Assembly (NCBI RefSeq): GCF_000400465.1
Contig: NW_008806285.1
Span: 210,001-242,000, forward strand
DNA length: 32,000 bases
From: Wallemia ichthyophaga EXF-994
Taxonomy: Eukaryota > Fungi > Basidiomycota
Direction: 5' to 3'
Below are positions 645-19,442 of this stretch, in pieces (positions within the stretch are counted from its first letter, which is position 1; each line of letters starts with the position of its first letter). The translations under genes were made by a program, and so were the position numbers. The notes under the pieces are model-generated. The model had not been told where the DNA came from and made no database searches. It saw nothing but the letters and a program-made list of their open reading frames with translations.

Positions 645-760
645 TGAAACTTTTCTTACTTGAAGAACTAGTCTTAAACACGCAAACCAAATAATAAGGT
701 TGAAAGCATAACAATATTATAACTGTGTTACGTATTCGTATAAAGGTATATATTTACTAA

Positions 761-3688
761 TTACAATTGTTTCTTGCCTTCAACGTTTTGGTGACTTGAA
801 GGATTAAAGTTGTTAGATTCACCGTTTGTGTTAAAGTTTAACAACTCTGAAGGCTCGCTTTCATTGTCAGATGTTGAGGCCTCGCTGTCAACTTCTGATT
901 TGTTAAAGTCGTTAATTGGATTGAGTCGTTCAATGTTGCCCTGAGCCGTCGCATCAACCTGCTTAGACTCAAAATCGGAGTTTGTAGCGACACTAGCTGC
1001 ATCGAGTTGCTCGACGCTTTTTGTGTTCATTCTATTCATTTTCAAAGTGTCGCGTACCATATGTCTACCTTTCAAGATCTCCCGTTCTATCTTAAAGCGG
1101 TTTTCGACAATATGTAGTTTCGGCCACGTTGCCAACTGCCCCATTTTCATCATGCGTCTGTTGAAAGTGAGCAACGTTATTTAGTAATTGCAACAACTCA
1201 CTTTAGTTCAGGCCTATCAGGATCCGACAATATATGGATCCAATCTAAAAACCTTGTCCGTGGCCAAATAGTTATGCTACCTTCAAACTGAGAGCTATAA
1301 GTTAGAGTTTTGAAATTCAGTAAACAAACAAACCTTTTGAAGAAATACAGATGAAAAATCCGTTGCTAATATCTCTGGCATTAATTCCAAGTCTCTAATA
1401 ACCTATTATTCGTAAGATTTTTGTTCTGTGGAATACCTCATCAACAACTAACTTTTAAATTTTTGCTTAATTCCAGTTTGAGGTAGGATTCAGCTGCCTA
1501 GTGAATTGTGAGATTGATTGAAATACGCGGTAAATGCCCTTACAGCTAAAAAGAATCCACCACGCCATCCTTGACCTCTACGGTGAGCAACAGGTTTACC
1601 AGCAGATCCTAAAAGATATTAGTCAATTGAAATGATGCGAAACACATTTAACACCTCTTGGAGCGTAGAAAAACAAGTGAACATGAGGGTTTACTTGGGA
1701 CACAATAGCGTGGTTGACTAAAGAGTATTAGAAATGCGAGTAGCGGAATAGTTATACTAAAGTACCATTATAAACTAACAGCTCAAATTAGAGAAAATAA
1801 AACCAATTGAAAGCTGAACTTACGAAGGTTTAACGACTGTAATGGTATATCAACTCTAATAGAACCATCCTTAAATCTAGCACCAAGACTAAAAGGCTCA
1901 ATTGATCCATCTTTACATTTGCGCATCAGGACAACTGGTGGAAGGATCTAGAGTTTGTCAAATTTTGCATCTACGCGCAAAGATAGACATACACCTGGAA
2001 CTGCTGCAGATCTATTCAAATAAATAAGTGAAAAGACTGAACAATAAGTAAAAAAGACTGAAAACGAACTTACGCGATAATGGCTGACCAAATTACGCAG
2101 TCGGGCGCTGTTAGATGATTTAAAATCTTTGTGGGACTGTGTCTATCAGATGGGGTAACAGATATATTCAAAGATCTCCCTGTTCGCTCGTAGGCGTCTT
2201 GAAATGTCATTGTACCTCTAGTGAAAAACATGGACTGTTTTTAAATTAGTCAAATCAAAAGATATGGGATCATCTAACCAACCTTCTCCGCCCAAGCTAT
2301 TGTGTCAAAACGAGCACCCGTGCGCCACCATCTCGGGAACCAAACAGAGAAGGAATCTTCGCAAGCTTTAATCTTATCTGCTAGTTCTGGTCTGGTATAT
2401 GGTCAGAACAGGACGCGCTGTGAACATGAACATGCTTTAATAATCGAGAAAGTTCCTTATCAGTGCGTGTTGCACAAAACGCTGCCACTAATCCACCTGC
2501 AGATGTACCAGTTATCACTCTAGGTAACAAGCCAGCTTCCAGAAATGCCTTAAGAACACCAAAGTGATAGCTTTTCAGACATGTAAGCAGAATTAAAGTT
2601 TGATCGTGCAGCTTACTATCCAAAGGAACCTCCTCCAGACAGACAAAGTGCTGACTGACCAAAATTGCGGTTAAAGGATTTAAAAAGGATACGCTTCTGT
2701 TCGATAGAGACAGAGGGATGATCGCGAAGAGTAGAAAGGGACCTGCTGACTAGAAGACCTAAGCTTTTGTTGTAAAGAGAGTTGATAGCTCACCCTCATT
2801 GATGTAGTCTTCAATCAGGACTTTGCTGCCGTAGAATGTCTAAAATGGCATGAGTTTTTTTTTTATAGAGCTAAAAAGTAAAATCACACACTTCACTATA
2901 AAGACGCGAGCTCTCAGTACCAGCAAAGTTGTTTTTGATGCAAATTTCAAGAACACCTATCAGGCCCTGAATGTCATCATTTTGACGCTTGTCTTTTAAG
3001 GAGGACAAGACCTAGAAATATAAGTAGAGGATAGTAGGAATGAAGAAGCTTACTTTCTGAACGAGTAAGGAATCATAGTAAATGCCGCTGTGATTATCGC
3101 TTTTCCATTTCTCGAGATCCAGATAGTGATCCATTTCAACGGCAGCTTTCTTCCAATCATGGAAATTGGTAGCATTTCTCATCTTTTGCCTTATAACAGC
3201 AGACTTGCCACGATCTGGAGGAGCTAATGAGTAGGTAAACAGGGGAATGAGGAATAACTGACGTTGAATAGCCCATTCCCAGAGATTTACGATTTGACGA
3301 ACAGAGACGTAGAATATGAATTCGATAGTGATAGTGAAGAAAAGGATGATGAGGAGGGGATATCTGATTGTAGTGTATCCCCAGCTAAAGCCAGAAGAAA
3401 CTTTGGGTTTACGTCTCCTGAGTTAGAGAGAGAGGATGAGAAAGAAGGAAGGGAAGGGGAAGAGACGTACCTCTTGACACGTTCATGTACAGGTGCAAAG
3501 TCGCTTAAAGCGGAAATGCGAGTGTCCTCATCGATGGAGTCAATTTGACTAAGGGCGAGTCTAAATGCTTGAATATGACTTTGAATGAGTTAGAATATGT
3601 ATAAATATATGATATTCTTATACCTTTGATCAATATAATCATTATTGAGCTCATCATCAAGCTTATCAATCGATTTTAGTGATGGCAT
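761..3688 (-). CDS. Patatin-like phospholipase / triacylglycerol lipase (Tgl3/4/5-like), many introns
   Basis: Patatin nucleophile motif GTSAGG within YHFGVLKAFLEAGLLPRVITGTSAGG. Manual splicing gives N-terminus MPSLKSIDKLDDELNNDYIDQSHIQAF...SDFAPVHERVKR followed by a hydrophobic segment typical of the family. ATG at 3688, stop TAA at 761-763. Internal exon borders were only partly checked. Confidence 0.88.
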
Positions 3689-3723
3689 CGAGTTTTAAAC
3701 AGATAAATTATCAATAAAATATT

Positions 3724-4372
3724 TTAGAAAGCTATTTTAGTATCCAAATCTTTGACTTCGCTTTCAACTTCCTCGTAGATCACTTTCCATTCTTCAAGCT
3801 TTTCCTTTGAATCTTCTTCACCTTTCTTTGATTTCGCTGACTTTGGTACGACCATCATACAGCTCGTTGGTCTCTTTGTACCAGAAGCTTCACCTAATTC
3901 TTCTTTGCTTGCGACGAATACGTATGGAATGGCAGATTCCTCACAAAGTACGGGGATGTGTGTTAGAATATCAATTGGTGATATGTTAGCAGCCATGATG
4001 ACCACGCTTTGATATGCTTAATGTCTTGTAACTCATGAACAACATAACTCACCCCTTCTCACCCTTCTTTACACCTTTAACAACTTCCTTCACACCACGA
4101 CGAAGATTACGAGTTTTTGCACCTTTTTTTTATTAAATTTTGTGTAACGCTGCTTAAATGATAATCAAACCTTTCTTTACACACTTGTGCACTTTCTTTG
4201 CCAATTTTTTACCTGCTAGTGGATGTGCTATCGGCGATAAACTTTCCATTGGAATTTCATCTTCCTCAGTCTTTGATTTTTTAGATTCCTTCTTAGGGCT
4301 GTCCACTGTAGCAGCTTCAGCATCATCCGCAGTAACCGATTTCCTCTTCTTCTTGGTCTCGTCTTTAGCCAT
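3724..4372 (-). CDS. NHP2: H/ACA snoRNP subunit Nhp2 (L7Ae family), 2 introns
   Basis: SPIAHPLAGKKLAKKVHKCVKK / RRGVKEVVKGVRKGEKG / VVIMAANISPIDILTHIPVLCEESAIPYVFVASKEELGEASGTKRPTSC, joined across two GT-AG introns. Confidence 0.95.
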
Positions 4373-4503
4373 TTGTGATTGTTTGAGTGGAAGGAGTGTA
4401 AGCTTAATTCAGCGAAACCCTAAGATGGGTTCCCGGGCGGGTGAAATTTAAAATTGACGGAGGAAAATAAGCTGAACGAGCTCATATTTTACGGTGGGTG
4501 AGG

Positions 4504-4563
4504 TGAAAATTTTCGGCTAAGCGACCATATGCTAGTAATTCTGGACGAAACGAGAAAATTTTT
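4504..4563. promoter_or_regulatory. RRPE-like motifs (TGAAAATTTT at 4504-4513; GAAAATTTTT at ~4554-4563) upstream of NHP2
   Basis: Two AAAATTTT-core motifs 130-190 nt upstream of a ribosome-biogenesis gene; an AAACCCTAA telo-box-like word also lies at ~4414. RRPE function is established in budding yeast and only inferred here. Confidence 0.35.
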
Positions 4564-4959
4564 ATCAAAAAGGAAAACTAGTGTGAAAGCAAAATATAGA
4601 ACGAATATAGAATGATTACAAAGTTTAAAAAATAAAGAGATTTACACTTGGTTACGCATGTGTTCGACTTCTGGGAAGAAATGAGGCCATCGGGGAGAAA
4701 CAGGTCGGATAACAAAAAGGCGCAGCCACAATCACTTAGTTGATAAATATGACTTATGCAGGAGAGCCATTTCCTTGTCTAACCTCACTATAACATCTTG
4801 CAAATGGCTTCAAACGTTCAATGAAGGGAGAAGATTATCACCAGGGAATTGGATTAATTATTTCGAATTACTATATAAATTATTTATTATTTATAATCAT
4901 ATTCATATTCATGTTTATCTTCTGTTACTTAATCATTCACTCTCATCACCCTCCCAGAA

Positions 4960-6181
4960 ATGCTCGACAAGTCTTTAAAATCTATCCTTGTTTGTAATTA
5001 TTTTATCATAATTACCCTTCTCATTCCTATCTCAGCCTTTATTGGATAGCGGCGATCACTACGGCGCTCATCAACGTACTAGAACTGCCGCTGCCAGGTT
5101 ATCCAGGAATGGCATTCAAGGTCAATATACTGCTATCGAATTGCTTTTCATCGTTTCAAAGTCTTTACTCGAAAAGTCTCAATGGGCTTCCGGCGTAGAC
5201 GTTTCTATCATGATGATTGATGCTATGGCTAAATTAGAGGCTCCTTGGGAGCCTACTCACAAAGCTCACGTTACTCAATTGATTGGATTATGTACCTCTC
5301 AATCTACTTGGAGGAAAAAGCTTATCGACGCTGCCATATCGTCTGTCTTACCTCTTTTTTGTCTTCTTTCGCTTATGTCACTTTAGTTCCAGCGCGAAAT
5401 CTTTCAATATACCCTCCGGTCATCCTGATATTCTTCAATACATAGGTAATCTCTACTACAAAGGTATTTTACATTTTCTTTCTCTTGATTTTTCTTATCT
5501 TCATTCCGTCCAGAATCTTCATTTAACGTGGCAGAACATTACTTGATGCTTGCTTCAAAAAAGGAATCTGCTACAATCCTTGCTAAAATGTACATGCAGT
5601 GGGCACTTTCCAACAATCAATATCATGACGATGTCGGCCGTTTTGCTTTGAGAGGTGTTCTTGGGTAAGTCATGCGTCTGAAAAAGCATGGATTACATTT
5701 CTAACTATCTTAATAGTTTCATATTAGCTGAACAAGTCGAATGTGCCATTACTTTTACTCTTAACTTTTTAATAGAGTTACAATTATCTCATCCTAACAC
5801 TATCCTTGAATCTCAACCTCTTGATGGCATAACTTTAACACAATCACATACCCTAAACTTCGCCCAACTAATCATTGCATGCATTCAAAGGAGCGGTACA
5901 TCAAATATTGCACAGGAGTGGAAGTCATTGGTAGATTATTATCGAAACTCTAGTTCCATTGTAAACACTCAACCTGTTACTCAAGTAGGTATTACTAGCG
6001 TTATATTTCAAGCTAATTAGTATAGGCTTGTGCAAAGATTGGTTCTCTCTACTTTGACATCAAACCAATGCAGTCCAGTGGTAACATGATGGATATCATG
6101 TCTTCTTTGCTCGGTGGTGCCCCTGCTCAATCAATTTCCAAACGTAAGTTGGCAAATACGTCAGTTGGTGAATTAGATTAG
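4960..6181 (+). CDS. GET4: Get4 (GET pathway, TRC35/DUF410 family), several introns
   Basis: DSGDHYGAHQRTRTAAARL N-terminal motif, an all-helical body, and a C-terminus GNMMDIMSSLLGG...GELD ending at TAG 6179-6181. ATG at 4960 is followed by a short first exon and a GT-AG intron. Confidence 0.85.
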
Positions 6182-6317
6182 ACTTGACTATTTTGTTTAA
6201 TTATACATACCGCATCCGCATCGAGGTTCAGTGAGATAGTGCTTTTGACTGTGACATTAAATGTTACTCATTGATTGGGGTTTCAGGCTTTTGAGAACCA
6301 CGCTTATTCAAAAAACT

Positions 6318-8202
6318 GTCCAAAATTACAATCAGAATGGATGCGTAAAAAAATTGATTAGCAAACTCAGCAAATTATTGAGGCTCGAATATATCTTGAC
6401 AGTGATTTATCTATAGTTGATGAATTGTATGTTACACAAAACATGGGCAAGAGTTAAAAATATATCATTAGACGCATTAACGCTTTTAAAGCACGGTGAA
6501 AGACATTTAACTTGCTGTTAGATTCTTGACACGCTAACTCTAGCCACATCACCTACCATACGTCCTTAATATCGCTCTTCTAGGATTTAAACCGCCGAAT
6601 GAAATCCATGACTATTCATATTTATTCTGATCACGCCTTTGTTCAGAATAAATATAAAATTTACATATTATTGGTCTTCGCTGATTACACTTCTTTCTAT
6701 TTGATTGTTCGCTCGTTGAACAAACCATTCATTCCACAACCCAGCAGTCTAAACCAACATAATGGAAGAAGGTTGTAAAGAATTCTAACCGAGTAATATT
6801 CATAGAGAAAACGAAATACTTTTGTTAGGAACAACGGCTGAGAAAAGAATGATAAACAATACAGATATACACTTTGTGGAAAAATTTCGAAAGGCTGAAG
6901 GCTGATGGAAAGAAAAGTGACTAAATTATTGTTCGTAAATGACGGAACTAATCGAGCCTAAGTGAGGGTCTACCTCAAGAATGAAGGACCTTGCACGCCC
7001 ACGGTTGAGGCATTTGGCATATCTGGCGGAGGTACACTTCCCAAGATGGGGTGGTCTTGCGCCAGTGCTCGAGGATCTCAAGCGAAACTGGCCAGGTGTT
7101 TCACCGGCTGACAGGACTAAGGGAAATCACCGCGTGCATGAACGAGGTACATGCTTTGCTTTCTTCTCCTCTTCCTCGCAGCTTATTAAACTTCTTACTT
7201 GTCTTGCGGGGTCTAAGCTTGCTTCAATGCTATCTTCTCTTCATTCTAGAAAAGGATGGGGGTCGTATTCTAGATGTCGTCGACCTCGCACTGCCCATCG
7301 TAATAGGGTGCGATTAGGGGCAAATAAAATTATTGAATGAAGAGCAATTGAAACAAGACTTCATAAAATTCAGGAGTCATTTTGCGATATTTAGGATGGA
7401 AATTTCACCTCCCGCTGAATCTACTAATCATGATGCCATAATTCGAACACTAGGATATGTTAAGGGAATATGTATCTATACTAATCACTATGCGTACTGC
7501 TTCCGGCTAACCTTATCTAGTATATAATGTTTCCTAAGCTAAGCGCTTTGGCTTGGCTGATGCTTGTTCATGATCGTAAAGTGGTAGTGGTGCCAAACTA
7601 TAGAAAAGAGCCATGATTGTATGTCTTTCAAGTTTATTTGCAAGGATCACATTGACTGATCAATTCCCAGAACGTCGCTGGTGTATGATAACCACTGAGT
7701 TGATGCCGGCAGAAGGGAGTAAGTTTCATCAGAGTTTAACAAGTGCGTAAAAAAGTTTTGCAATCATAACAAAATCACATTTATTAATATCTCATAACAG
7801 TTTCACTGCGTTCGAGCCCCACAATAACTTCATCTTTTCTCCCTGAAAAGCTTCCTCATTGCGATTAGCAGGATGACGATAGGATAAATAGGAAAACAAG
7901 ATATATACTCGCTATAGGTAGCTGTAGAAGCAAGTAGAATTGCTACTTAGAGCTCAATTCATTAAGAAGAATTATTGACCGCTTTGGCGGCAAGAGCCCT
8001 ACGTCTATTAAAATCCAGAAAAATTAAAAAATTAACTAGCTAGCTAACCCAAGGTAGTCGCAATAGTCATTATCACTGTAATATTTAGAGCTTTGCAGAA
8101 AGAGGCATGTTTTCTCATTTTGCCAAGCCGACCACTAGACTAACCCTTATAGTTGACATCTGACCCTAACTTTTTCAAGGGCTGCTTAATATGAGTTTTT
8201 AA
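6318..8202 (+). repeat. Left arm of a 1,885-bp near-perfect inverted repeat
   Basis: Base x pairs with base 18635-x from 6318/12317 to 8202/10433. The only mismatch I saw by eye is 8188/10447. The identical mirrored ORFs in the track (6981-7340/11295-11654, 7051-7317/11318-11584, 7333-7527/11108-11302) confirm the symmetry. Confidence 0.98.
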
Positions 8203-8620
8203 GGTTGTCTCCCTATTAAACTACATATATGGCTCAAATATTATTTCAAAGGTCGATAATTCTTTGAATTACTATGAAGGCTAAATAGTAAGTTTGAAGT
8301 GGAGCTCCAAAGTAAGTTACATAAAAAGCTCCCTATTTAATTTTCAAGGTGGCTTACGGGTCATTTTAAAGTGTGGCTAACTAGTAATATTCAAAGATGT
8401 CTTACTAGGAATGTTCAGGGGTGTCTCACTAAATATATCTCAATAGTAATTATTAATTTAAAAGTGTGAGTTATTGCGATATTTCTGAAGTAAATCACCG
8501 ACAATGTTCAAGGTTTCCTCGCCAATAATACCTAATAATGGCTTACTTTTAATTATAATAAATGTCTCATCAATTTCAAGAATCGATGGATCACTAGCAA
8601 AGTTAGGATGTGACTAATCA
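8171..8620 (+). repeat. Highly degenerate 24-bp tandem array (consensus roughly TTCAAGG-TGKCTYACTA-TAA)
   Basis: A conserved CT dinucleotide recurs at 8185, 8209, 8233, 8281, 8305, 8329, 8353, 8377, 8401 and 8425, then 3 nt out of phase at 8518, 8542, 8566 and 8614, usually preceded by a TTCAAGG/TTTAAAG-like word. Confidence 0.75.
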
Positions 8621-10432
8621 TCAGCCAAAGTCAAGCAAGTGTGCCCAATAATTCAAAGGGAATATGAGCACACCCGAAGCTGTTCTTGACCAGATGAGCT
8701 CCTATTAGAATTCCGGCGCATGATATACTACGGTTCATTCACATCAGTTAATCTTTCGAACACGATTGATACCACTAGAAACGCTAAATTTTACGACAGC
8801 ACATATGGAAACGGATTGCCATTTTCTTCATCGAGACAATTCATCAAAAAGGGTAAAATCAATCACAGACCGGCTAAGAACAACAAATTTATGACGTAGA
8901 AACTATAAAACAAGTTCCAAAGTGAAATGTTTCGCTGTTTCACGATATGACCAACCCAAATTGAGTGTCGATGCGTTGGTCTATTAAATCATGCTTGCAT
9001 AAAAAACAAAAAAGTTCTACCAAACAGATGAGAAGCAAATAAAACATGCAAACGTGCTTATCAGGGCAAAAAAAAACATTGCACCGTGCCGACTGCCAAA
9101 GTCCCAGGCGAAAAATGGAATTGGAAATGGTCAAAACATGCGTCAGTTGAAACAGGGTGATAGATCTCCATGCATTAATAAATATTAGATAATGAAAATA
9201 TGAACAATGAGACAAAAACACAAACGGACACAAAAAAAGCCATGGAATGAAACTGTTCAACTTCTTCCATTTTGTTAAGTACATAAAAATCTGTAATGAT
9301 ATGCAACAAAATGTCCCCCGTTTGAAATCAATTGAAAACAACGAAGACCTAAGAAAGTAATGTTATAGAATGACCAAGAACGTATCAGCTACTTTGCGGT
9401 TATATAAGTTGAAGATACTGTTACAGGAGGGCAACGTCAATTCTTTGTAAGCCGATTAAAGACGATGGCATCCTTATACTTGATTTAAACTTTTCTAAAA
9501 ATCAAGCTGGTTGGTATATTTTTCTTTTGAAAGTCTTGGAGTAAATATTGTCAAGTAGCAATAATCACTGAAATATTAATAATATACAAATTAATGTAAA
9601 AAAGTTTGGCACTAAAACAAGTTAATTCAAGGACAAAAAAACATCACTTTCCATTTAAGTAATTGCGTTAGCTGCGATAACATAGCATTACAGTTAAACT
9701 TAAATTGTTCATTTTTAAATATTAATCGAGAGTCCGAACTTTTCTCCTTTTCACGTAGTGGCTTTTTGAAAAACGTTTTCCAACGAAGGAAAAGTAGGTC
9801 TCGAAGAATTATTCATCATTGAGAGCAATTTTGCTAATTGTCAAGCTCAACAGTTAGAGTATTTGGTTTATGTTCATCTTTTATGTCAAAAGAGATTTGC
9901 TAACTCGGATGTAAAAACAAATTGAAGTTTAGCAAAATAATGAATAAATCTTAATTTATGGCAAAATTAACGCTCAAAAAAAGAACATTTCTTCCACCTA
10001 CTTCGGCAGTGAAAGTAAATTTATAATAAATATTTATGAAATCATGCCAATACTGTCATTACATATATTTGCATATTTTTGCATAGCGAATTTCTAGATT
10101 CTTATGAACCAGGTTCTGAGTAGCTTTAAAGAGAGACAAAATTCCAAAATTTACCCCTATTGAAGTTTCTTTGCCTTTCTTCAAGGTCGCGTAGATATTA
10201 AGGTTTTCTTTTAATTTGGTACATGATTATTTACAGGCAATTTGCTATCCCTCCTTGACAAAAAAAAAAAAATTGTATTCAGACAATGAATGGGTAACGA
10301 AGTCCGCTACAACATAGCGATGTTCTCATTTATTTTGGACAACCTAGATGTGGTGTCATTATCCCATTATTATAACTTTAAAATCGTCTAGTTACTTCGT
10401 CAAAGCAGACATCACTTTACAAACTTTACAAG
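8203..10432. other. Unique 2,230-bp AT-rich non-coding core between the inverted arms (candidate centromere core or invertible segment)
   Basis: No recognisable spliced or unspliced gene found on either strand. Visibly AT-rich, especially 9480-10430, with A/T tracts (A13 at 10260-10272). The functional call is inference. Confidence 0.55.
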
Positions 10433-12317
10433 TTAAAAACTCATATCAAGCAGCCCTTGAAAAAGTTAGGGTCAGATGTCAACTATAAGGGTTAGTCTAG
10501 TGGTCGGCTTGGCAAAATGAGAAAACATGCCTCTTTCTGCAAAGCTCTAAATATTACAGTGATAATGACTATTGCGACTACCTTGGGTTAGCTAGCTAGT
10601 TAATTTTTTAATTTTTCTGGATTTTAATAGACGTAGGGCTCTTGCCGCCAAAGCGGTCAATAATTCTTCTTAATGAATTGAGCTCTAAGTAGCAATTCTA
10701 CTTGCTTCTACAGCTACCTATAGCGAGTATATATCTTGTTTTCCTATTTATCCTATCGTCATCCTGCTAATCGCAATGAGGAAGCTTTTCAGGGAGAAAA
10801 GATGAAGTTATTGTGGGGCTCGAACGCAGTGAAACTGTTATGAGATATTAATAAATGTGATTTTGTTATGATTGCAAAACTTTTTTACGCACTTGTTAAA
10901 CTCTGATGAAACTTACTCCCTTCTGCCGGCATCAACTCAGTGGTTATCATACACCAGCGACGTTCTGGGAATTGATCAGTCAATGTGATCCTTGCAAATA
11001 AACTTGAAAGACATACAATCATGGCTCTTTTCTATAGTTTGGCACCACTACCACTTTACGATCATGAACAAGCATCAGCCAAGCCAAAGCGCTTAGCTTA
11101 GGAAACATTATATACTAGATAAGGTTAGCCGGAAGCAGTACGCATAGTGATTAGTATAGATACATATTCCCTTAACATATCCTAGTGTTCGAATTATGGC
11201 ATCATGATTAGTAGATTCAGCGGGAGGTGAAATTTCCATCCTAAATATCGCAAAATGACTCCTGAATTTTATGAAGTCTTGTTTCAATTGCTCTTCATTC
11301 AATAATTTTATTTGCCCCTAATCGCACCCTATTACGATGGGCAGTGCGAGGTCGACGACATCTAGAATACGACCCCCATCCTTTTCTAGAATGAAGAGAA
11401 GATAGCATTGAAGCAAGCTTAGACCCCGCAAGACAAGTAAGAAGTTTAATAAGCTGCGAGGAAGAGGAGAAGAAAGCAAAGCATGTACCTCGTTCATGCA
11501 CGCGGTGATTTCCCTTAGTCCTGTCAGCCGGTGAAACACCTGGCCAGTTTCGCTTGAGATCCTCGAGCACTGGCGCAAGACCACCCCATCTTGGGAAGTG
11601 TACCTCCGCCAGATATGCCAAATGCCTCAACCGTGGGCGTGCAAGGTCCTTCATTCTTGAGGTAGACCCTCACTTAGGCTCGATTAGTTCCGTCATTTAC
11701 GAACAATAATTTAGTCACTTTTCTTTCCATCAGCCTTCAGCCTTTCGAAATTTTTCCACAAAGTGTATATCTGTATTGTTTATCATTCTTTTCTCAGCCG
11801 TTGTTCCTAACAAAAGTATTTCGTTTTCTCTATGAATATTACTCGGTTAGAATTCTTTACAACCTTCTTCCATTATGTTGGTTTAGACTGCTGGGTTGTG
11901 GAATGAATGGTTTGTTCAACGAGCGAACAATCAAATAGAAAGAAGTGTAATCAGCGAAGACCAATAATATGTAAATTTTATATTTATTCTGAACAAAGGC
12001 GTGATCAGAATAAATATGAATAGTCATGGATTTCATTCGGCGGTTTAAATCCTAGAAGAGCGATATTAAGGACGTATGGTAGGTGATGTGGCTAGAGTTA
12101 GCGTGTCAAGAATCTAACAGCAAGTTAAATGTCTTTCACCGTGCTTTAAAAGCGTTAATGCGTCTAATGATATATTTTTAACTCTTGCCCATGTTTTGTG
12201 TAACATACAATTCATCAACTATAGATAAATCACTGTCAAGATATATTCGAGCCTCAATAATTTGCTGAGTTTGCTAATCAATTTTTTTACGCATCCATTC
12301 TGATTGTAATTTTGGAC
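10433..12317 (-). repeat. Right arm of the 1,885-bp inverted repeat
   Basis: Reverse complement of 6318-8202. The match ends abruptly after ...TTTTGGAC at 12317 and at 10433 on the inner side. Confidence 0.98.
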
Positions 12318-12506
12318 TGAGCGGAGGCAAATACTAACACAAAGGATAGCCGAATAACCCGATGAGAATGACAACATACTACAGTGCACTTCAAATTCTA
12401 ATTCATAGTAGCCATTTAATTCTTTTCGTGTGAATTTAAAAATAATGGATTGCACGCAATTCTATATGAAATGTACAATGAATCTCGCGGAATGGGTATT
12501 TAATAA

Positions 12507-14946
12507 TTAGTTGTTGTAGTTTAGGCTTGCGGAACTTAGCCTACGCAAAGATGTTCTGGTTGAATTGTTAAATTGATCTTGTTCTTTAGTATGGTCATAA
12601 GACGGAATATTTGCATTTGCAAATTCATATGTAGTTGTAGCAGCGCTTGGACTTGACGTATTAGCAAATGGTGTAATGGTCCCGCTAGTATTTGACATAG
12701 AGCCCCGCTTATATGACATCTTCTTTGAGGGAGTGATACCAAAGCGAGATTTTACACTACAGATTGAAGGTGATCGTGAGACTGAGGGATCACTAGACGA
12801 TTCGGTTTTAGGCAAATCACTGTTAATTAGAGAGTTTCTTTGCGAATTTGAAGACTTATTATCAATCAAATCATTTTCTTCGAGTTGTGTTGAATGAGAA
12901 TAGAGGGACATTCTTTCAGTATTGCTTGCAATTGTTTGAGACTCGTGTGACTGATTCAACTTGGCTTGTTCATGACATAGCTGTGTCGATTTAAAGTGAT
13001 CTTTCAAATCATTCCAAGGTAAGTTATTTTCTTTGAGAACAGTTTCAGTATTCTTATTATAAAGTGATTTTGATTGAGAATCGACAGCATTTAGTCTATT
13101 CTTCAAAGTCATAAAGGCTGATGACTGAGGTAATATCATCAAAAGACCATATAAGCACTTGAAAAGGAATGGATTTTGATCTGGTTCAAGTAATTGTAGT
13201 CTTAAACCAATGAAAACTGGGGATTCAATTAATTGAACAAGTTTGTCAACTTGAACGAGTAAATCGACATTGACGTGTAAATCCGAAATGATGTATAATA
13301 ATTCACTGGCGTGTTGATAGTTCTGAGAGAGCAAACATAGAGTAAAAACTGAGATTGGATTATGTGACCAAGACTTGTAAATTTTGCAAAATAATGATTT
13401 ATCTTGATCAGTTTCGATGTTTTTCAAAGATTTACGTAAGTCTGATAGTTCGGGTGCAGTAATCAAAACAATAGTTAGCTTTTGTATCAAGAAACTAACA
13501 AAATCGAAATCATCTTCAGATTGAATAATATCGGCCAAGGCTTGATAGATCTTAGAAGAGCCCAAACTTAAAGATAGTTGGCGAATAATCAAAGAACCGC
13601 GAAGATCTAAAAATCCACGGTCTGTAGAGAATAATTGAATCAAATTTTTCATGAACGCTATAAAGTAACTGAAATCAGAAACTTTGGAAATTTGAGCTAA
13701 AAGACGAAGGTTCCTTTTAATGACGTGCTCTGACGGATCGGAAAGAGTTTTGAGTAAAGCAGGAAAGGTGGCATCATCCAAACTGAAGATCTAGAAGACA
13801 GATTATTATAAAAGGCCAAAGGAAGAAGATACTAACCTCTTGGGGAGATATAGACTGTAACATCAACATCCAATCTAAAGCAGCAACTCTGGTTTGAACG
13901 TTATCATTCAACAGTTGCAAAGTTAGATTTGATAAAGTTAGCTGATAATCAAAGTTTTCAATAGAATGTAATGAACCTTTAATGATATTGAATAATTTGG
14001 AATTCAACTGATCAACTAAATGCTGGGTGTGAGGATTGTGATGAGAAAGGTATGGTAAGATTGTTGGAATCAATCTGGGAGTAAGAGGAATTAGAAGAGA
14101 AGGAGCAGAATCGAACAAAGAAGATAACCAATGAATTGCAGAGAATTGAATGACTTCATCTTGAGAGTTTAAATGATTAAACAGAGTTTCAGCGAGTTCA
14201 AAGTAATTGGGTTGAGATTGATTTGATTGAATATTAGATAAAAAGTTATTTAATAACGATTGAGTGGCCGATCTAACGTCAGGACTCGAATCAGACAGAT
14301 AACGCAATAAAGCGTCAAGAATCTTGGGTAGATGGGATATCAAATCGTTGCTGTTGATAGAATCGAATAAGGAAATCCAAGAAAGTAAAAACATTCTGGT
14401 GAAAGGAGAAACGACGTAAATTCTTTTCGATAGTAGTTGAATAAAGTGATTCAAATTGAATTGAGAATAAGACTCGGTGACTATGTCTTTTATTAGTCTA
14501 TCTAATAACTCACTACCATTCTTGACAGAGAGTTCAGAATCGGAGGAGAGTTTATTAAGACAATCGAATATTTGATCAAAGTGAGGCAAAAGATTAGATC
14601 TGGAAACTTTTGCGATGTTGTACATGGATTCGCAAGTGAAGTATCTAATTCTAGGATCAATATCGTTGAAGCAGGAGAGTATAGGTTTAATAATGATGTC
14701 TAGATAATGAATTAGTTGATCATCTAAAGCAACAGCGGCAGCTGCTAAACCAATTAAGCCACCATTCTTGATATTTGAATGATTCTCTTTATTAAATGAG
14801 GAAGCTAGCTGATCAATAATTAGTTTTATTTTATTTGTTTCATTCTTAAATAAAAATTCTTTCAACTGCTTTTCCAATTCCAACGCAGCAGATTTCCTCC
14901 TTTCATACTTTTGGTCATATAAGCTTCTTGATAAGTGATGGTCCAT
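12507..14946 (-). CDS. VAC14: Vac14, scaffold of the Fab1/PIKfyve complex; one intron at ~13794-13840
   Basis: MDHHLSRSLYDQKYERRKSAALELEK, KNGGLIGLAAAAVAL, RIRYFTCESMYNIAKV, SVKNGSELLDRLIKDIV, DDATFPALLKTLSD, RGSLIIRQL, SWSHNPISVFTLCLLSQNY and QVDKLVQLIESPVF all match Vac14 blocks. Confidence 0.96.
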
Positions 14947-15416
14947 TTCAAACAAGTCAATAAATCTTATAGACCGAATAACTATGTGAGCGATTTTGGA
15001 TGGATGAAGTATGAGTTTATAATTGTAATAGGAAGTTTCAGATGGATTACGTAGAGCAAGATTACCTTTCTTAACGAGGAATTTGGTAACGGCGTTCACA
15101 ATATTGTCGTTTACAGGGGGAGTGTATTATTATTCAATAGCGGCAGTTAAACAAGATGATTTTAGTGTGAGTATGGAGTTGTTAGAGGGTGTAGATAGTG
15201 GTACTGATGCTTTCAAAGGACGTTAAACCATTGATGATTAATAATCATGATTCGAATAAGAATACATCGATAGATGATAGCAACAGGAATAACAATAGTA
15301 ATGTCAATCAAGATATCGGTATCCTCAATAGAATACTAGGATACAACGGCTATAAAACATCAAGCAGTTTATTAGTAACTGATGCACCAAATTTAAATAA
15401 TTTAGGTAAAATGTAA
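14938..15416 (+). CDS. COA3: Cytochrome c oxidase assembly factor 3 (Coa3/Cox25), 3 exons, 126 aa; only exon 3 appears in the ORF track
   Basis: Exons 14938-14985, 15032-15166 and 15219-15416 with GTGAGC..TAG and GTGAGT..AAG introns give MVHFKQVNKSYRPNNY-EVSDGLRRARLPFLTRNLVTAFTILSFTGGVYYYSIAAVKQDDFS-DVKPL...LLVTDAPNLNNLGKM. The RAR.PF...N..T and YYYSI.AVKQD.F patterns plus one TM helix match fungal Coa3 as I recall the family. Confidence 0.85.
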
Positions 15417-15452
15417 AATTATCCATGAATACAAGCTCATATCAATTCAACG

Positions 15453-16358
15453 ATGAACCAAAACGATTTTAGACAGTTAATCAGTCAGAGTAATCAGTCT
15501 AAAAAGCATGAAAATCTGAAAAATCTAAACAAGAATGATAAAAAGAGATTGTCCAATCTATCCACCTTATCTAATGATATTCAACTACTCGCTCAATCAA
15601 AAGGCTTAAATTTAGATGAAATCAATAAACAAAAGCTCAATAAATCTAAAGAAGTTGATGAGCATGTTCAATCAGAATTAGACTCCGTGATCAGTAACAT
15701 AAAACCTCCTACTAATCAACAACATCATTCAAATAAAAGATCTCGTAATGACATACTAGCCGAATTAAAGCGATCTAAACTTGATCATCAGTTTGATGAT
15801 TCTGCTTCAACCCAACATACCTATAAGCCTCCTTCTCCCGATGCCTTGAACTCTGATGATGACATTTTCAACGATACCAACGATAAGTATCAGCCACCCA
15901 TTTTATCTGATAGCGATAGCAATAGTGATAGCGGTAGCCATAACAATATCGATACTACTTCGAAAGACATTCAATCACCATTTTCACAACCGCAATCACC
16001 ACAAATCTCACAATCACCTCTACGGAAAAACTCCCTCTCCCCCTCTCCATCCCCTGAACTAGACATCTCTGGTAGATTAGTCGGCTTAACTTCAACTGCA
16101 CTACCCAACGTCGCCCAACGCATTCAATCTGATAAAGACGCTGAAATAGCTGATCAACGTAAACAACGTAAACAAATTTGGCTAGCTAAGCAAGGCATCA
16201 AGAAGGACACTGGTGACAACCCTGAACCTCCACCCCAAAAGACTCAAACTGACTCTCAAAAGTTAAATTCAGACTATCAAAGGTATGTTATAGTCTTGAC
16301 ATTCAATCAATTAATAAGGTTACATTCACAGAATCAACGCTTATATACAAAAAAATAA
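15453..16358 (+). CDS. RED-like (IK/Smu2-related) nuclear protein, divergent and short; probable intron near the 3' end
   Basis: Starts MNQNDFRQLI (RED-like N-terminal F-R-x-L-L type motif), has an acidic SDDDIF segment and a C-terminal QKLNSDYQR motif. Otherwise low-complexity; the family call is from memory of motifs. Confidence 0.45.
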   Translation: MNQNDFRQLISQSNQSKKHENLKNLNKNDKKRLSNLSTLSNDIQLLAQSKGLNLDEINKQKLNKSKEVDEHVQSELDSVISNIKPPTNQQHHSNKRSRNDILAELKRSKLDHQFDDSASTQHTYKPPSPDALNSDDDIFNDTNDKYQPPILSDSDSNSDSGSHNNIDTTSKDIQSPFSQPQSPQISQSPLRKNSLSPSPSPELDISGRLVGLTSTALPNVAQRIQSDKDAEIADQRKQRKQIWLAKQGIKKDTGDNPEPPPQKTQTDSQKLNSDYQRYVIVLTFNQLIRLHSQNQRLYTKK

Positions 16359-16408
16359 AAAATAAATAAACCCTACTATACAATCCTTTCCTTCATCTAC
16401 CAGTATCT

Positions 16409-19367
16409 TTACGCATTTGACATTTCGACTGGTACTGTTTCATAACCATTCTTTTGTAACTTTAATGGTCTAGTTGTAATCAGATCCCATATCTTATTTA
16501 AACGACCTGTAAAATCATTCTTCATCTTGTTTGTGATCCTCTCTCCTTCTTCGAATCTTGGCTTCCTCCACAGCTTCAACGTTAGGCTGTTTACGACAAC
16601 TGAAACTGACGAACACGCCATCGCCAACCCTGCCATCATCGGATGTAAATGAATATTCCAAGGCAAGAACATTCCCATAGCTAATGGTATAAAAATTGTG
16701 TTATACCCACAAGCCCACAAGAAGTTCATCTTTATCTTCTTCATTATCGCTTTTGATAACTTGATTGAGTTATAAACATCCTTGATTTCTCCTTGCCTCA
16801 TCAATACTATATCTGCTGCTTCAATTGCAATAGATGATCCAGAAGCCAAAGCTATTCCCACGGATGCTGCAGCAAGTGCAGGTGAATCATTTATTCCATC
16901 TCCCACCTGTACCTATATTAGTTTTTTTAAACAGTAAAATTTCAACTGACCATTGCTACACCTCCATCATTATCATCAATCATTGTAATCACCCTTTCTC
17001 GCTTTCCTTTCGGACTAACACCTGCAAATACTCTATTTTTTGCTATAAAAGCTTTTTCTGCTATTGACAAAGCGGTGTTCATTTGATCACCAGTCATCAG
17101 GTAGCTTTCGATTGAGATATTCGATAACGACCTAATTGTTTCTCTAACATTTGACTTAATTTCATCGCCAAGTGCGATTACCACTATTGGTTCTGATTGA
17201 ATAGTCACATATACTATTGTAAAGCCTTTTTCTGAATTTATATTCCTAAACTGTTCCAGGTCCTTTGGCTCTTTTATTCCTTTATGCAGTATTGTTTGAT
17301 TACCAATTTCGACTTGCAAATCAATTGAAGACTTATCGGATAATAACAAGGATACTTCTGATTCAACACCTTTACCTGTATGTGATAACCAGCTCTTGAT
17401 TGAATAGACATCGTCATTATTATTATCAACGATAACTTTATTGTTGAAATGATTCATAATTGCTTGACCCAGTGGGTGCTCACTCTTTGATTCCACAATC
17501 GATATAATCTTCATCACTTGCTCTTTTTTGAAACCTAATGAATGATAACCACCTCTGAATGCATCATCATTCCATGCAACAGAAGTAACGTTAATGTTCC
17601 CTTCAGTTATTGTACCAGTCTTATCCCAAACTATTCTTCTAATTTTGCTGGCTTGCTCTAATGCTTGACCACCTTTTATCAAAATTCCATTCTGAGCACC
17701 AACACCTGTACCAACCATTACAGCAGTTGGTGTTGATAATCCTAAAGCGCATGGACATGCGACAACAATAACTGAAATGCAAAGTTTCAAACAAACTGCA
17801 AATCTACTAACACCAATTTGATTGAATATGTGAGGTAAAGAGGATTTTGGTATAATCAAATAAGAAAGTATCATCCAGACCGAGAATGTTAATAATCCAA
17901 GTAAAATAACCGTTGGCACAAAGTAGCCAGCAATTCTATCGGCAAATGCTTGAATAGGGGCTTTAGAAGTTTGAGCATCTTCAACCAACTTTACTATTTG
18001 CGATAATGCCGTATCTGTACCTGATCTTGTAACACAAACATCAATAGATCCATTTATGTTCATTGTACCACCGGTAACAACATCCCCTTTTGATTTGGGT
18101 ACCGGTATGGGTTCACCTGTAATCATACTTTCATCAATTAATGAAGTACCTTTACAAACACAACCGTCTGCAGGTAATCTCTCTCCAGGTACCAACTTAA
18201 CTATGTCACCCTTTTGTAACAATTCCGTTGGTATCTTTTTTTCGTCGAAATGTACTTGATCTTGGTTTGATTCATCATAATTTGTGTAAATAACAGCTGA
18301 ACTTGGAGCCAATTGTAATAAATCTGATAAAGCTGTACTAGTTTTACCCTTTGCTAGATTCTCCAAGTATCTACCAAGCGTGACAAACGTAATCAACATT
18401 GTTGATGTATCAAAAAACGTTTGAGGTATTACGCTATCACTAGACCAAGTGAAAACGCTTGATACCATAACACCTGCACTATAAACAAAAGCAGCTGTTG
18501 TACCAAAAACAACTAAAACGTCCATTGTGGCTGATTTGTGAAGTAAACTTTTATAAGCCGGCTTATAGAAGAGTTTACCGATTCCAAATTGAACTGGAAT
18601 TGTTAAGACTAGACAGATAAGATCACCAATTGTCAATCCACGCCATAAGTTGAAGATAACAAAAGGTTTAACTGAAGGTATCATTGGTAAAAGCATTCCA
18701 ATTAGGAAGACGGGTATAGCGAATGTGGAGGAATACTTCAGAGCGTCTTTCCATTGATTAACTTCCTTGATTCTAGATAAGGATTTTAATTGACTATCAT
18801 TCCTGTCATCACGGATCATTGAATCGAAACCCGCATCCTGGATGGCTTCAACGATATCTCTAACGCCAATTTGATCAGCATTATAATGAACTCTAGCGAA
18901 TTCCATTGGTAATGAAATATCTGACGAGATAACGCCATCTAAATTTGATAAAGCTGATTGTATTGATGAAGTGCACGAAGAGCACGTCATGCCATAAATG
19001 GAGATATCAATAACGGACTTTGAGTTTAAATTAGTCAAAGCTGTTGCTTCAAATCCCATTTCTCCTATTTCCTTTTATAATTTTGTCAAATTGTCTATAA
19101 ATAGGTATTACAACTCACGTTAGCGAGCTTTTCAGGATCCCAGTAATCTTTGATATAATTTATAGTTGCCTTTTCTGATAACAGCGCGACTTGAATGGAT
19201 TCAACCCCTTGTAATTTCCCTATATAACTCTCGATACTCTGTAACGTAAGGAAGTCAGCGTAAAGAGAAACAATGAATAATATTAGATGACAAACCTGTA
19301 CACAAGAGCTACATGTCATGCCTTCTACTTTAAGCGTGCAATTCTCGATTGCTGTACTTTCCATCAT
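16409..19367 (-). CDS. CCC2: Copper-transporting P1B-type ATPase with two N-terminal HMA domains, several introns
   Basis: GMTCSSC twice, TGE (ITGEP), CPC (VACPCALG), DKTGT, SEHPL, TGD, GDGINDSP, YN..IP and MACSSVSVV motifs. Confidence 0.96.
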
Positions 19368-19442
19368 GAAAGTTGCGTTGTACGTCCAAAGCTATTAATC
19401 AAATGCGATAAAATCCGTGATACAAATAAAATAAATTATCAA

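What the first reader, a model, noticed from the sequence alone, without database searches (positions are those of the whole stretch)
6318..12317. Arm-core-arm inverted-repeat block: candidate inverted-repeat regional centromere in a basidiomycete
Seen: two 1,885-bp arms in inverted orientation around a unique 2.2-kb AT-rich core. The ~6.3 kb between the convergent GET4 and VAC14 stop codons has no gene I can recognise, while most other intergenic gaps in the window are 35-350 nt and none exceeds ~600 nt. I see no target-site duplication, transposase or tRNA. Known: this layout matches the short regional centromeres of Komagataella phaffii (~2-kb near-identical IRs around a ~1-kb mid), Candida tropicalis and the S. 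pombe imr/cnt domain. The basidiomycete centromeres I know of are different (retroelement-rich in Cryptococcus, short AT-rich cores in Malassezia). Inference: this may be the centromere of this chromosome and an independent origin of IR-type centromeres in Basidiomycota.
Basis: partly seen in the sequence, partly recalled or inferred. Interest (0 to 1): 0.85.

Follow-up and report, generated by a model that had tools for sequence, protein, structure and literature searches.

The report
Candidate inverted-repeat centromere in Wallemia ichthyophaga
A 6-kb gene-free block of two mirror-image 1.9-kb arms around a 2.2-kb unique core is real in the salt-loving fungus Wallemia ichthyophaga; it lies in a broad low-GC region and is the best candidate for this chromosome's centromere, but no functional evidence exists yet.

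Summary
Arms 6318-8202 and 10433-12317 are reverse complements (1884 of 1885 bases) around a 2230-nt unique core, between the convergent GET4 and VAC14 genes.

The window is Wallemia ichthyophaga EXF-994, reference scaffold KE007235.1, positions 210,001-242,000. That reference is a 2013 short-read assembly.

The outer junctions are independently supported:
- Seven other strain assemblies (k=120) all end exactly 119 nt inside the right arm.
- Metagenome contigs end or start exactly 30 nt inside each arm.

The identity of the arm interiors and the orientation of the core are less secure. The reference still carries the collapsed 1870-nt arm as an orphan scaffold, KE007285.1.

The block shows no protein homologue, Pfam domain, Rfam family, tRNA, satellite, target-site duplication or coding-like codon usage.

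New supporting evidence: the block lies in a broad GC trough. The first 20 kb of the window are 36.9% GC against a genome mean of 45.4%. GC3 rises from 0.27-0.32 next to the block to 0.42-0.47 at 15-25 kb. A GC3 trough containing an unusually long intergenic region is the signature used to predict centromeres in yeasts.

The centromere reading is the best explanation (about 0.5) but is untested. One block per chromosome, CENP-A binding and transcriptional silence could not be checked here. I found no paper describing Wallemia centromeres.

The parts
6318..8202 (.). Left arm of the inverted repeat (1885 nt; the perfectly repeated part is 6318-8187)
   Evidence: Logan contigs L010 and L011 end at 6347, 30 nt inside the arm. 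Orphan reference scaffold KE007285.1 equals 6318-8187 exactly.
8203..10432 (.). Unique central core, 2230 nt, 33.1% GC (lowest 300-nt window 28%), A-rich on the + strand around 8850-9450
   Evidence: No similarity to the arms or to the rest of the window. No residual inverted similarity at its two ends. Its longest ORF (8943-9362, - strand, 140 codons) has noncoding-like codon usage, score -0.24.
10433..12317 (.). Right arm of the inverted repeat (1885 nt; the perfectly repeated part is 10448-12317)
   Evidence: Logan contig L013 starts at 12288, 30 nt inside the arm. Seven NCBI strain contigs end at about 12199, 119 nt inside the arm, which is k-1 for the k=120 assemblies.
8188..8188 (.). The only arm-to-arm mismatch (A here; its partner 10447 reads G on the complementary strand), 15 nt from the inner junction
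6900..7350 (.). GC-richer island (48-49% GC) inside the left arm, mirrored at 11285-11735. It holds overlapping open frames and the 44-aa reference gene model J056_004102, which is probably spurious.
   Evidence: Codon score is negative. No Pfam match. RNA fold z-scores are -1.8 and -1.2, not significant.
6615..6658 (.). Local 44-nt imperfect palindrome inside the arm, mirrored at 11977-12020
   Evidence: Logan contig L012 ends inside it at 6649.
5042..6181 (+). 3' exons of GET4, the left boundary gene. Its stop lies about 137 nt before the arm.
   Evidence: Pfam PF04190; frame reading
12507..15099 (-). VAC14, the right boundary gene, convergent with GET4. Its stop lies 189 nt from the arm.
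1..20000 (.). Broad GC-poor region that includes the flanking genes: 36.9% GC against a genome mean of 45.4% and a CDS mean of 47.5%
   Evidence: genome values from PMC6738226 and PMC3849046

Best explanation
The block is the small regional centromere of this W. ichthyophaga chromosome, of the inverted-repeat type.

Proposed mechanism (inferred, not shown):
- CENP-A nucleosomes and the kinetochore assemble on the unique 2.2-kb core and tail off along the two 1.9-kb arms.
- The 3' ends of the convergent GET4 and VAC14 genes bound the domain, so no neighbouring transcription starts towards it.
- Recombination between the arms keeps them alike and can flip the core.
- Suppressed meiotic exchange around the site lowers GC-biased gene conversion and produces the surrounding GC3 trough.

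Shown here: the arm-core-arm structure, its presence at the same junctions in independent strains and samples, the absence of any recognisable gene, RNA or transposon feature, and the GC/GC3 trough.

Inferred: kinetochore binding, uniqueness per chromosome, silence, arm homogenisation and core flipping.
For: 1. Architecture and size. Arms of 1.9 kb, a core of 2.2 kb and arms of 1.9 kb give 6.0 kb, with 1884 of 1885 arm bases identical. This matches K. phaffii centromeres: 2-kb IRs, a 1-kb mid region, unexceptional base composition and no transcription (PMC5010909).

2. It fills the only long gene-free gap seen. The gap is 6.3 kb against 76-690 nt elsewhere in the annotated part of the window. 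The genome is about 72-74% coding and 1.67% repeats.

3. Nothing codes there.
- The index-based search of 5.8 billion proteins gave no hit for 15 arm and core ORFs.
- An exhaustive search of 1.84 billion representatives with the longest arm ORF found only the reference's own 44-aa model.
- No Pfam match and no Rfam match at E<=1.
- Codon scores of the long ORFs are -0.10 to -0.24, against +0.11 to +0.33 for real exons.

4. No transposon signature. There is no target-site duplication, no transposase and no copy elsewhere in the window.

5. Same junctions in independent data.
- Seven strain assemblies end exactly k-1 = 119 nt inside the right arm.
- Logan contigs from three runs stop 30 nt inside the left arm (L010 from SRR25393947, L011 from SRR25394091) or start 30 nt inside the right arm (L013 from SRR25394091).

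6. GC trough.
- Window 1-20 kb is 36.9% GC, and 43-44% by 8-27 kb to the right of the block. The genome mean is 45.4% and the CDS mean 47.5%.
- GC3 is 0.27-0.32 within 7.4 kb of the block, 0.35-0.40 at 9-13 kb and 0.42-0.47 at 15-25 kb.
- A GC3 trough containing the longest intergenic region is the published centromere predictor (PMC2997560).

7. Internal position. The block lies at 216-222 kb of a 339-kb scaffold, and strain contigs continue 385-393 kb to the right of it.
Against: - There is no functional datum of any kind.
- Only one locus could be examined, so 'one per chromosome' is untested.
- The core is no more AT-rich than the adjacent VAC14 gene. The lowest GC3 values lie on the VAC14/ATPase side, and only 6 kb is visible to the left, so the trough is not shown to be centred on the block.
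- The short-read strain assemblies have 194-962 contigs. Repeats that break contigs are therefore not rare in this genome, and the copy number of the arm is unknown.
- Near-perfect arm identity is partly an assembly construct.
- The centromeres described so far in Basidiomycota are transposon-rich (Cryptococcus) or short AT-rich cores (Malassezia, PMC7025860), not inverted repeats.
- A distant relative (70% VAC14 identity) has no such block next to VAC14.
Confidence: 0.5

Rival explanations
1. A non-centromeric inverted segmental duplication. An intergenic piece was copied in reverse, for example by template switching during replication or repair. It persists as structurally odd DNA with no function, or with a minor regulatory one. 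The GC trough would have another cause.
For: - The sequence is unique and noncoding, with no family resemblance to anything.
- Arm polymorphism between strains (2 SNPs in 332 nt in L012) is about the same as in the flank (3 in 704 nt), so there is no sign of constraint.
- The core is not distinctive in composition relative to VAC14.
Against: - A 6-kb neutral insert is unexpected in a genome that is about 72-74% coding and has intergenic gaps of tens to hundreds of bases.
- It is kept at identical junctions in all seven strains examined and in the metagenome samples.
- It coincides with a GC3 trough, which this model does not predict.
Confidence: 0.3
2. A non-autonomous DNA transposon of the foldback or long-terminal-inverted-repeat kind, 6 kb long with 1.9-kb terminal inverted repeats, inserted between GET4 and VAC14.
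For: - Long, near-identical terminal inverted repeats with sharp outer ends.
- The reference paper reports 85 kb of DNA-transposon-like sequence in the genome.
- The arm breaks every short-read assembly, as dispersed repeats do.
- Arm copy number was not measured.
Against: - No target-site duplication of any length at the outer ends, although near-identical arms would imply a young insertion that should still have one.
- No transposase or any Pfam domain in six frames of the ORFs of 45 aa or more.
- No second copy in 40 kb of surrounding sequence.
- No match in the JGI metagenome scan.
- The orphan scaffold is exactly the collapsed arm, not a copy with its own flanks.
Confidence: 0.07
3. A locus for noncoding RNA. 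Either read-through transcription of the inverted repeat gives a long hairpin RNA that feeds small-RNA silencing, or each arm carries an unrecognised RNA or very small protein gene in its GC-richer island (6900-7350).
For: - Each arm has a 450-nt island of 48-49% GC, close to the genome's coding GC, inside 33-39% GC surroundings.
- The reference annotation placed a 44-aa gene model there.
- An inverted repeat with 1.9-kb arms would form double-stranded RNA if transcribed through.
Against: - No Rfam match at E<=1.
- Fold z-scores of the island are -1.8 and -1.2, not significant.
- Codon usage of its ORFs is noncoding-like.
- The 44-aa model has no relative in 1.84 billion representatives.
- No expression data were available to me.
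Confidence: 0.08
4. An assembly artefact. The second arm, or the arm-core-arm order, was created by scaffolding and gap filling of a collapsed repeat in the 2013 short-read assembly.
For: - The source assembly is SOAPdenovo K=21 from 500-bp and 2-kb libraries, barely longer than the arm.
- The collapsed 1870-nt arm contig is still present as orphan scaffold KE007285.1.
- The only arm difference lies within 15 nt of unique sequence, where short reads can phase it.
Against: - In independent data the same arm end abuts both the GET4 flank and, in reverse, the VAC14 flank. The contig ends fall exactly k-1 inside the arm, for k=31 and for k=120.
- With two outer flanks, two distinct inner continuations and a single-copy core, the only path through the graph is arm-core-arm. 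Only the orientation of the core and the true number of differences inside the arms remain open.
Confidence: 0.03

Closest known systems
Komagataella phaffii centromeres (simple inverted-repeat type; PMC5010909)
   Same: - Two near-identical kb-scale arms (2.0-2.7 kb there, 1.9 kb here) around a short unique core, about 6 kb in total.
- No genes and no sequence motif.
- Base composition only slightly below the genome mean.
- In a repeat-poor compact genome, such identical repeats longer than 1 kb are rare.
   Different: - The core here is twice as long (2.2 kb against about 1 kb).
- The host is a basidiomycete.
- Cse4 binding, silence, early replication and core-orientation polymorphism are shown there and untested here.
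- There is no sequence similarity.
Candida tropicalis and Candida parapsilosis inverted-repeat centromeres
   Same: A unique mid region of a few kb flanked by inverted repeats of a few kb, in a gene-free gap (as summarised in PMC5010909, PMC7292649 and PMC12711049).
   Different: In C. tropicalis the repeats are homogenised between chromosomes. Whether Wallemia chromosomes share arm sequences is unknown. Function is untested here.
Schizosaccharomyces pombe central domain (cnt flanked by imr repeats)
   Same: A unique centre flanked by chromosome-specific inverted repeats.
   Different: S. pombe has about 15 kb of CENP-A domain plus tens of kb of outer otr heterochromatic repeats. No outer repeats exist within 6 kb to the left or 27 kb to the right of this block.
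GC-poor-trough centromeres of Clavispora lusitaniae and Yarrowia lipolytica (PMC2997560), and Malassezia short AT-rich centromeres (PMC7025860)
   Same: The candidate lies in a regional GC/GC3 trough and in an unusually long intergenic region. Active genes sit right next to it.
   Different: - Those centromeres have no inverted repeat.
- Malassezia cores are under 1.2 kb at 13-18% GC against a genome of 58.5%, a 40-point drop. Here the core is 12 points below the genome mean and no lower than VAC14.
Foldback or long-TIR DNA transposons
   Same: Long terminal inverted repeats around a noncoding middle.
   Different: No target-site duplication, no transposase and no further copies seen.

Membership tests
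Inverted-repeat small regional centromere (K. phaffii / C. tropicalis type) | kb-scale, near-identical inverted arms flanking a unique core of one to a few kb | tested here: met
   Arms are 1885 nt with 1884 of 1885 bases identical, and the core is 2230 nt. The outer junctions are confirmed in independent assemblies. Arm-interior identity is partly by construction.
Inverted-repeat small regional centromere (K. phaffii / C. tropicalis type) | CENP-A (Cse4) or kinetochore protein occupancy peaking on the core | not testable with these tools
   No ChIP-seq or CUT&RUN data for Wallemia were found.
Inverted-repeat small regional centromere (K. phaffii / C. tropicalis type) | Exactly one such block per chromosome | not testable with these tools
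   Only this 32-kb window plus 7.7 kb of the scaffold could be read.
Inverted-repeat small regional centromere (K. phaffii / C. tropicalis type) | Free of genes | tested here: met
   No homologue, Pfam or Rfam match, tRNA or coding-like codon usage. The sole annotated model (44 aa, on the orphan scaffold) has no relatives.
Inverted-repeat small regional centromere (K. phaffii / C. tropicalis type) | Transcriptional coldspot | not tested
   The 2013 RNA-seq exists, but the held supplements list annotated genes only. The arm model was not found in them.
Inverted-repeat small regional centromere (K. phaffii / C. tropicalis type) | Core found in both orientations among isolates (recombination between arms) | not testable with these tools
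   Short-read contigs stop at the arm ends. No contig of the core from another strain could be retrieved.
GC-poor-trough centromere signature (Lynch et al. 2010) | Regional minimum of GC3 that includes flanking genes, with an unusually long intergenic region inside it | tested here: inconclusive
   GC3 is 0.27-0.32 beside the block and rises to 0.42-0.47 at 15-25 kb. The region is 36.9% GC against a genome mean of 45.4%. Only one side is visible over more than 6 kb, and the chromosome-wide profile is unknown.
Malassezia-type short AT-rich centromere | Core under about 1.2 kb with extreme AT-richness (tens of points below the genome mean) | tested here: not met
   The lowest 300-nt window is 28% GC and the core mean is 33.1%, against a genome mean of 45.4%. 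VAC14 coding sequence is equally low.
S. pombe-type large regional centromere | Outer arrays of repeats (otr) flanking the central domain | tested here: not met
   No further repeats occur in the window apart from the formin FH1 tandem repeat. Genes abut the arms within 137-189 nt.
Foldback / long-TIR DNA transposon | Target-site duplication flanking the terminal inverted repeats | tested here: not met
   The flanks read ...AAAAAACT | arm ... arm | TGAGCGG..., with no shared bases and no flank similarity above shuffles.
Foldback / long-TIR DNA transposon | Multiple dispersed copies, or a transposase in autonomous members | tested here: inconclusive
   No transposase domain and no other copy in about 40 kb. 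The orphan scaffold equals the collapsed arm. Genome-wide copy number was not measurable.
Flip-flop mating-type switch (Ogataea / Komagataella type) | Mating-type genes inside or next to the invertible segment | tested here: not met
   The core has no gene. The window genes identified are a tRNA synthetase, a ribosomal L7Ae-family protein, GET4, VAC14, Coa3, a Cu-ATPase, a methyltransferase, tubulin, a formin, eRF1 and a kinesin. The described W. ichthyophaga MAT region (STE3, HMG, BAP31) is not in the window.

The most novel reading that the evidence does not exclude
This block is a functional centromere, and W. ichthyophaga chromosomes each carry one arm-core-arm centromere with its own sequence. 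That would be the first inverted-repeat regional centromere outside Ascomycota. It would be an independent origin of this architecture in an early-branching basidiomycete class (Wallemiomycetes) with a very compact, repeat-poor genome.
Probability: 0.45. Interest if true: 0.75.

Novelty: new member of a known kind. Interest (0 to 1): 0.58.

Why it matters
I found no paper describing a centromere for any Wallemiomycete. The basidiomycete centromeres described so far are transposon-rich or short AT-rich cores.

If this block is a centromere, several things follow:
- The inverted-repeat architecture, which has arisen repeatedly in budding yeasts and in fission yeast, would also have arisen in Basidiomycota. 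That strengthens the case that the structure itself, rather than any sequence, favours centromere establishment.
- It would give an immediate and cheap way to predict all Wallemia centromeres from existing assemblies, to count chromosomes, and to study karyotype change between W. ichthyophaga, W. hederae and W. mellicola.
- It would provide a 6-kb candidate element for stable plasmids in the most halophilic fungus known.

If it is not a centromere, it is an ordinary though curious inverted duplication.

Tried and rejected
**Searches that found nothing**
1. Other copies of the arm in JGI metagenomes: an exact 24-mer scan found nothing.
2. GET4-based search for related loci in JGI metagenomes: nothing. 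Both metagenome scans are now used.
3. Index-based protein search with 15 concatenated arm and core ORFs: no hit. This search is lossy. It missed the reference's own 44-aa model, which the exhaustive search later found. It also did not return W. ichthyophaga VAC14.
4. Exact look-ups of arm ORF 6981-7340, the two VAC14 ORFs and the L7Ae first exon: not on record. I could therefore retrieve no core contig from another strain, and no NCBI strain contig for the left flank.
5. BLAST of the whole block against PLSDB plasmids, to exclude vector or bacterial DNA: no match.
6. Expression of the arm gene model in the 2013 supplements: not found.
7. Literature on Wallemia centromeres or a long-read Wallemia assembly: none found.

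**Checks that gave a negative result**
8. Structured RNA in the GC-richer island of the arm: fold z-scores are not significant and there is no Rfam match.
9. An older, decayed extension of the repeat into the core or the flanks: none above shuffles.
10. Synteny with relatives. The only relative with usable context (L001-L006, 28% GC, 70% VAC14 identity) keeps Coa3-VAC14 but has a PCI-domain gene where the block and GET4 are. It is too distant to interpret.

**An argument I withdrew**
11. I first intended to argue for concerted evolution of the arms, from one arm difference against 0.14-0.44% divergence between strains. I withdrew this because the arm interiors in the reference probably come from one collapsed contig.


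Full report
**Identity of the window**

The eRF1 ORF (28453-29733, - strand) is 100% identical to proteins labelled Wallemia ichthyophaga. Seven NCBI strain assemblies of that species match the window at 99.6-99.9% DNA identity.

The EXF-994 reference, GCA_000400465.1, scaffold KE007235.1 (339,016 nt), matches at 100% over 13,630 nt. The offset is record = window + 210,000. The finding therefore lies at KE007235.1:216,318-222,317.

Wallemia belongs to the basidiomycete class Wallemiomycetes (PMC3849046).

The reference was assembled in 2013 from Illumina 500-bp and 2000-bp libraries with SOAPdenovo, K=21. It has 82 scaffolds, 45.35% GC overall, 47.51% GC in coding sequence and 1.67% repeats (PMC3849046).

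**The observation**

The repeat finder reports one inverted pair, 6318-8202 and 10433-12317. The arms are 1885 nt and 2230 nt apart.

A base-by-base comparison shows one mismatch, 8188 against 10447, 15 nt from the inner end. The perfect repeat is therefore 1870 nt.

GET4 (+ strand, Pfam PF04190) ends at about 6181. VAC14 (- strand, PF11916) ends at 12507. They are convergent, and the arms start 137 nt and 189 nt after the stops.

Gene models for the annotated part of the window give coding-to-coding gaps of 76-690 nt. The 6.3-kb gap stands out about tenfold.

**Is it an assembly artefact?**

Caution is needed because of how the source was assembled. The reference still contains an orphan scaffold, KE007285.1, of 1870 nt. 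It equals window 6318-8187 and the reverse complement of 10448-12317 at 100%. This is the collapsed repeat contig.

Two consequences follow:
- The two arm interiors in the scaffold were probably filled from pooled reads, so their near-perfect identity is partly by construction.
- The lone mismatch sits where short reads anchored in unique core can phase it.

The orientation of the core rests on 2-kb mate pairs across a 1.9-kb arm.

The topology itself is nevertheless well supported by independent data:
- In Logan assemblies of metagenome runs carrying the same species (99.6% identity), contigs L010 and L011 run from the GET4 side and stop at 6347.
- Contig L013 starts at 12288 and runs into VAC14. 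Each overlap is exactly 30 nt into an arm. From my own knowledge, these assemblies use k=31, so 30 nt is k-1.
- L011 and L013 come from the same run.
- All seven NCBI strain contigs that carry eRF1 end at window position about 12199, which is 119 nt into the right arm. Those genomes were assembled with a maximum k of 120 (PMC6738226), so this is again exactly k-1.

The same arm end therefore abuts the GET4 flank and, in reverse, the VAC14 flank in every data set examined. The arm also has two different inner continuations. With a single-copy core, the only path through the graph is arm-core-arm. I put the artefact reading at about 0.03. What remains open is the core orientation, the true number of differences between the arms, and the genome-wide copy number of the arm.

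**What is in the block**

I found nothing recognisable:
- No tRNA.
- No Rfam family at gathering score, or at E<=1.
- No tandem array.
- No similarity of the arm or the core to each other or to the rest of the window.
- No decayed extension of the repeat.
- No match to plasmids.
- No Pfam domain at E<=1 for ten of the twenty ORFs of at least 45 codons, the longest included, beyond three weak matches far below the gathering scores.
- No hit in an index-based search of 5.8 billion proteins with 15 ORFs.

That last tool proved lossy. I therefore also ran the exhaustive search of 1.84 billion representatives with the longest arm ORF (6966-7337). It returned only a 44-aa protein and two low-complexity chance hits. 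The 44-aa protein is the reference's own GeneMark model J056_004102 on the orphan scaffold.

A codon-usage score trained on the window's Pfam-verified genes gives +0.11 to +0.33 for real exons that were held out. The long ORFs of the block score -0.10, -0.15 and -0.24.

Each arm has a 450-nt island of 48-49% GC (6900-7350 and its mirror). I cannot explain it. Its RNA fold z-scores are -1.8 and -1.2, which is unremarkable.

**Transposon reading**

The outer ends are sharp, but the flanks share no duplicated bases...AAAAAACT | arm ... arm | TGAGCGG.... Near-identical arms would imply a young insertion, which should still show its target-site duplication. There is no transposase. I rate this reading at about 0.07. 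Arm copy number from read depth would settle it.

**New evidence: a GC trough**

The published genome mean is 45.35-45.41% GC, and 47.51% in coding sequence. GC along the window is as follows.

| Region | GC |
|---|---|
| Whole window | 39.3% |
| Window 1-20 kb, with or without the block | 36.9-37.0% |
| Core | 33.1% |
| Arms | 38.8% |
| Window 20-32 kb | 43.3% |
| Next 7.7 kb of the scaffold | 43.9% |

The drop is in the genes themselves. Third-position GC (GC3) changes with distance to the right of the block as follows.

| Genes | Distance from the block | GC3 |
|---|---|---|
| VAC14, the next ORF, Cu-ATPase, methyltransferase | 0.8-7.4 kb | 0.27-0.32 |
| Tubulin, formin | 9-13 kb | 0.35-0.40 |
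| Genes further out | 15-25 kb | 0.42-0.47 |

Lynch et al. (PMC2997560) showed that in several yeasts each chromosome has one GC3 trough that marks the centromere. They predicted the centromere as the unusually long intergenic region inside the trough. They attributed the troughs to suppressed recombination and GC-biased gene conversion. This locus shows both features.

The limits of this evidence:
- I see only 6 kb to the left of the block.
- The lowest GC3 is on the VAC14/ATPase side rather than symmetric around the block.
- I have no chromosome-wide profile.

I therefore score this test as inconclusive but supportive.

**Comparison with known centromeres**

- *K. phaffii.* Its centromeres are 2.0-2.7-kb near-identical inverted repeats around a roughly 1-kb mid region. 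They are unrelated between chromosomes, untranscribed and of unexceptional base composition, and the mid orientation is polymorphic. In that compact genome only seven sequences longer than 1 kb occur in identical copies, and four of them are the centromeric repeats (PMC5010909). The present block matches in layout and scale.
- *Other budding yeasts and fission yeast.* Inverted-repeat centromeres recur in budding yeasts (PMC12711049) and in S. pombe. S. pombe also has outer repeat arrays, which are absent here.
- *Malassezia.* Its centromeres are cores of 13-18% GC in a 58.5% GC genome, without inverted repeats (PMC7025860). This block does not fit that type.
- *Wallemia.* I found no paper on Wallemia centromeres, and none reporting an inverted-repeat centromere in a basidiomycete.

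**Relatives**

A metagenomic relative with 70% VAC14 identity and about 28% GC (L001-L006) keeps Coa3-VAC14. It has a convergent PCI-domain gene about 120-290 nt after VAC14 and no inverted repeat. A closer relative (L007, 82.5% DNA identity) is known only from a 1.5-kb contig. These say that the GET4-block-VAC14 arrangement is not ancient. They are too distant or too short to test positional conservation.

**Verdict**

The structure is real and is shared by all W. ichthyophaga genomes I could examine. It is gene-free, shows no transposon features and lies in a GC3 trough.

The centromere reading is the best single explanation, at about 0.5. The main rival is a functionless or otherwise-functioning inverted duplication, at about 0.3. 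Every defining functional property of a centromere remains untested. The decisive computations are whole-assembly self-alignment, arm read depth, RNA-seq mapping and GC3 profiles. All of them can be done with public data that these tools could not reach.

Noticed in passing
L022 (NCBI GCA_000400465.1 scaffold KE007285.1, 1-1870) = window 6318-8187: The reference assembly holds a redundant orphan scaffold that is exactly the collapsed arm. It carries a 44-aa gene model (J056_004102, EOQ98635.1) with no relatives, which is probably spurious. It inflates the scaffold and gene counts by one.
   Followed up: yes
window 24322-24711 (formin FH1 region, - strand gene 23715-26714): There are three tandem 66-nt copies (74-79% alike) plus a further 45-nt repeat pair, in the proline-rich part of the formin gene. 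Alignments of the strain assemblies to the window break here, with length differences of about 63-69 nt, so the repeat number varies between strains.
   Followed up: partly
L001-L006 (ENA and Logan metagenome contigs, up to 197 kb): An unnamed fungus with a very compact genome, about 28% GC and 70% VAC14 identity to W. ichthyophaga occurs in many metagenome assemblies (43 index blocks). No named NCBI protein matched it closely. It may be an unsequenced relative of Wallemia.
   Followed up: partly
L007 (Logan SRR25399871, 1552 nt) against window 12520-13894: A closer relative, with 82.5% DNA and 84% protein identity in VAC14 and 31% GC, possibly W. hederae or similar. The contig is too short to show what follows VAC14.
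   Followed up: no
L015, L017-L020 gene tables (window about 20.6-28.2 kb): In five of the seven strain annotations the formin and the neighbouring tubulin gene are fused into a single model of 2233-2255 aa. This is probably an annotation artefact.
   Followed up: no
window 12507-15099 (VAC14): The index-based protein search did not return any W. ichthyophaga VAC14, although the gene is present in the reference and an ORF is called on Logan contig L013. Negative results from that tool should be read with care.
   Followed up: partly
window 6900-7350 and 11285-11735: Each arm holds a 450-nt island of 48-49% GC within 33-39% GC surroundings. It has open frames in several phases but no coding or RNA signal. 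Its origin is unexplained.
   Followed up: partly
window about 4633 (left flank, L010 against the window): A small indel separates the SRR25393947 strain from the reference upstream of GET4. The ungapped comparison goes out of register from here on.
   Followed up: no
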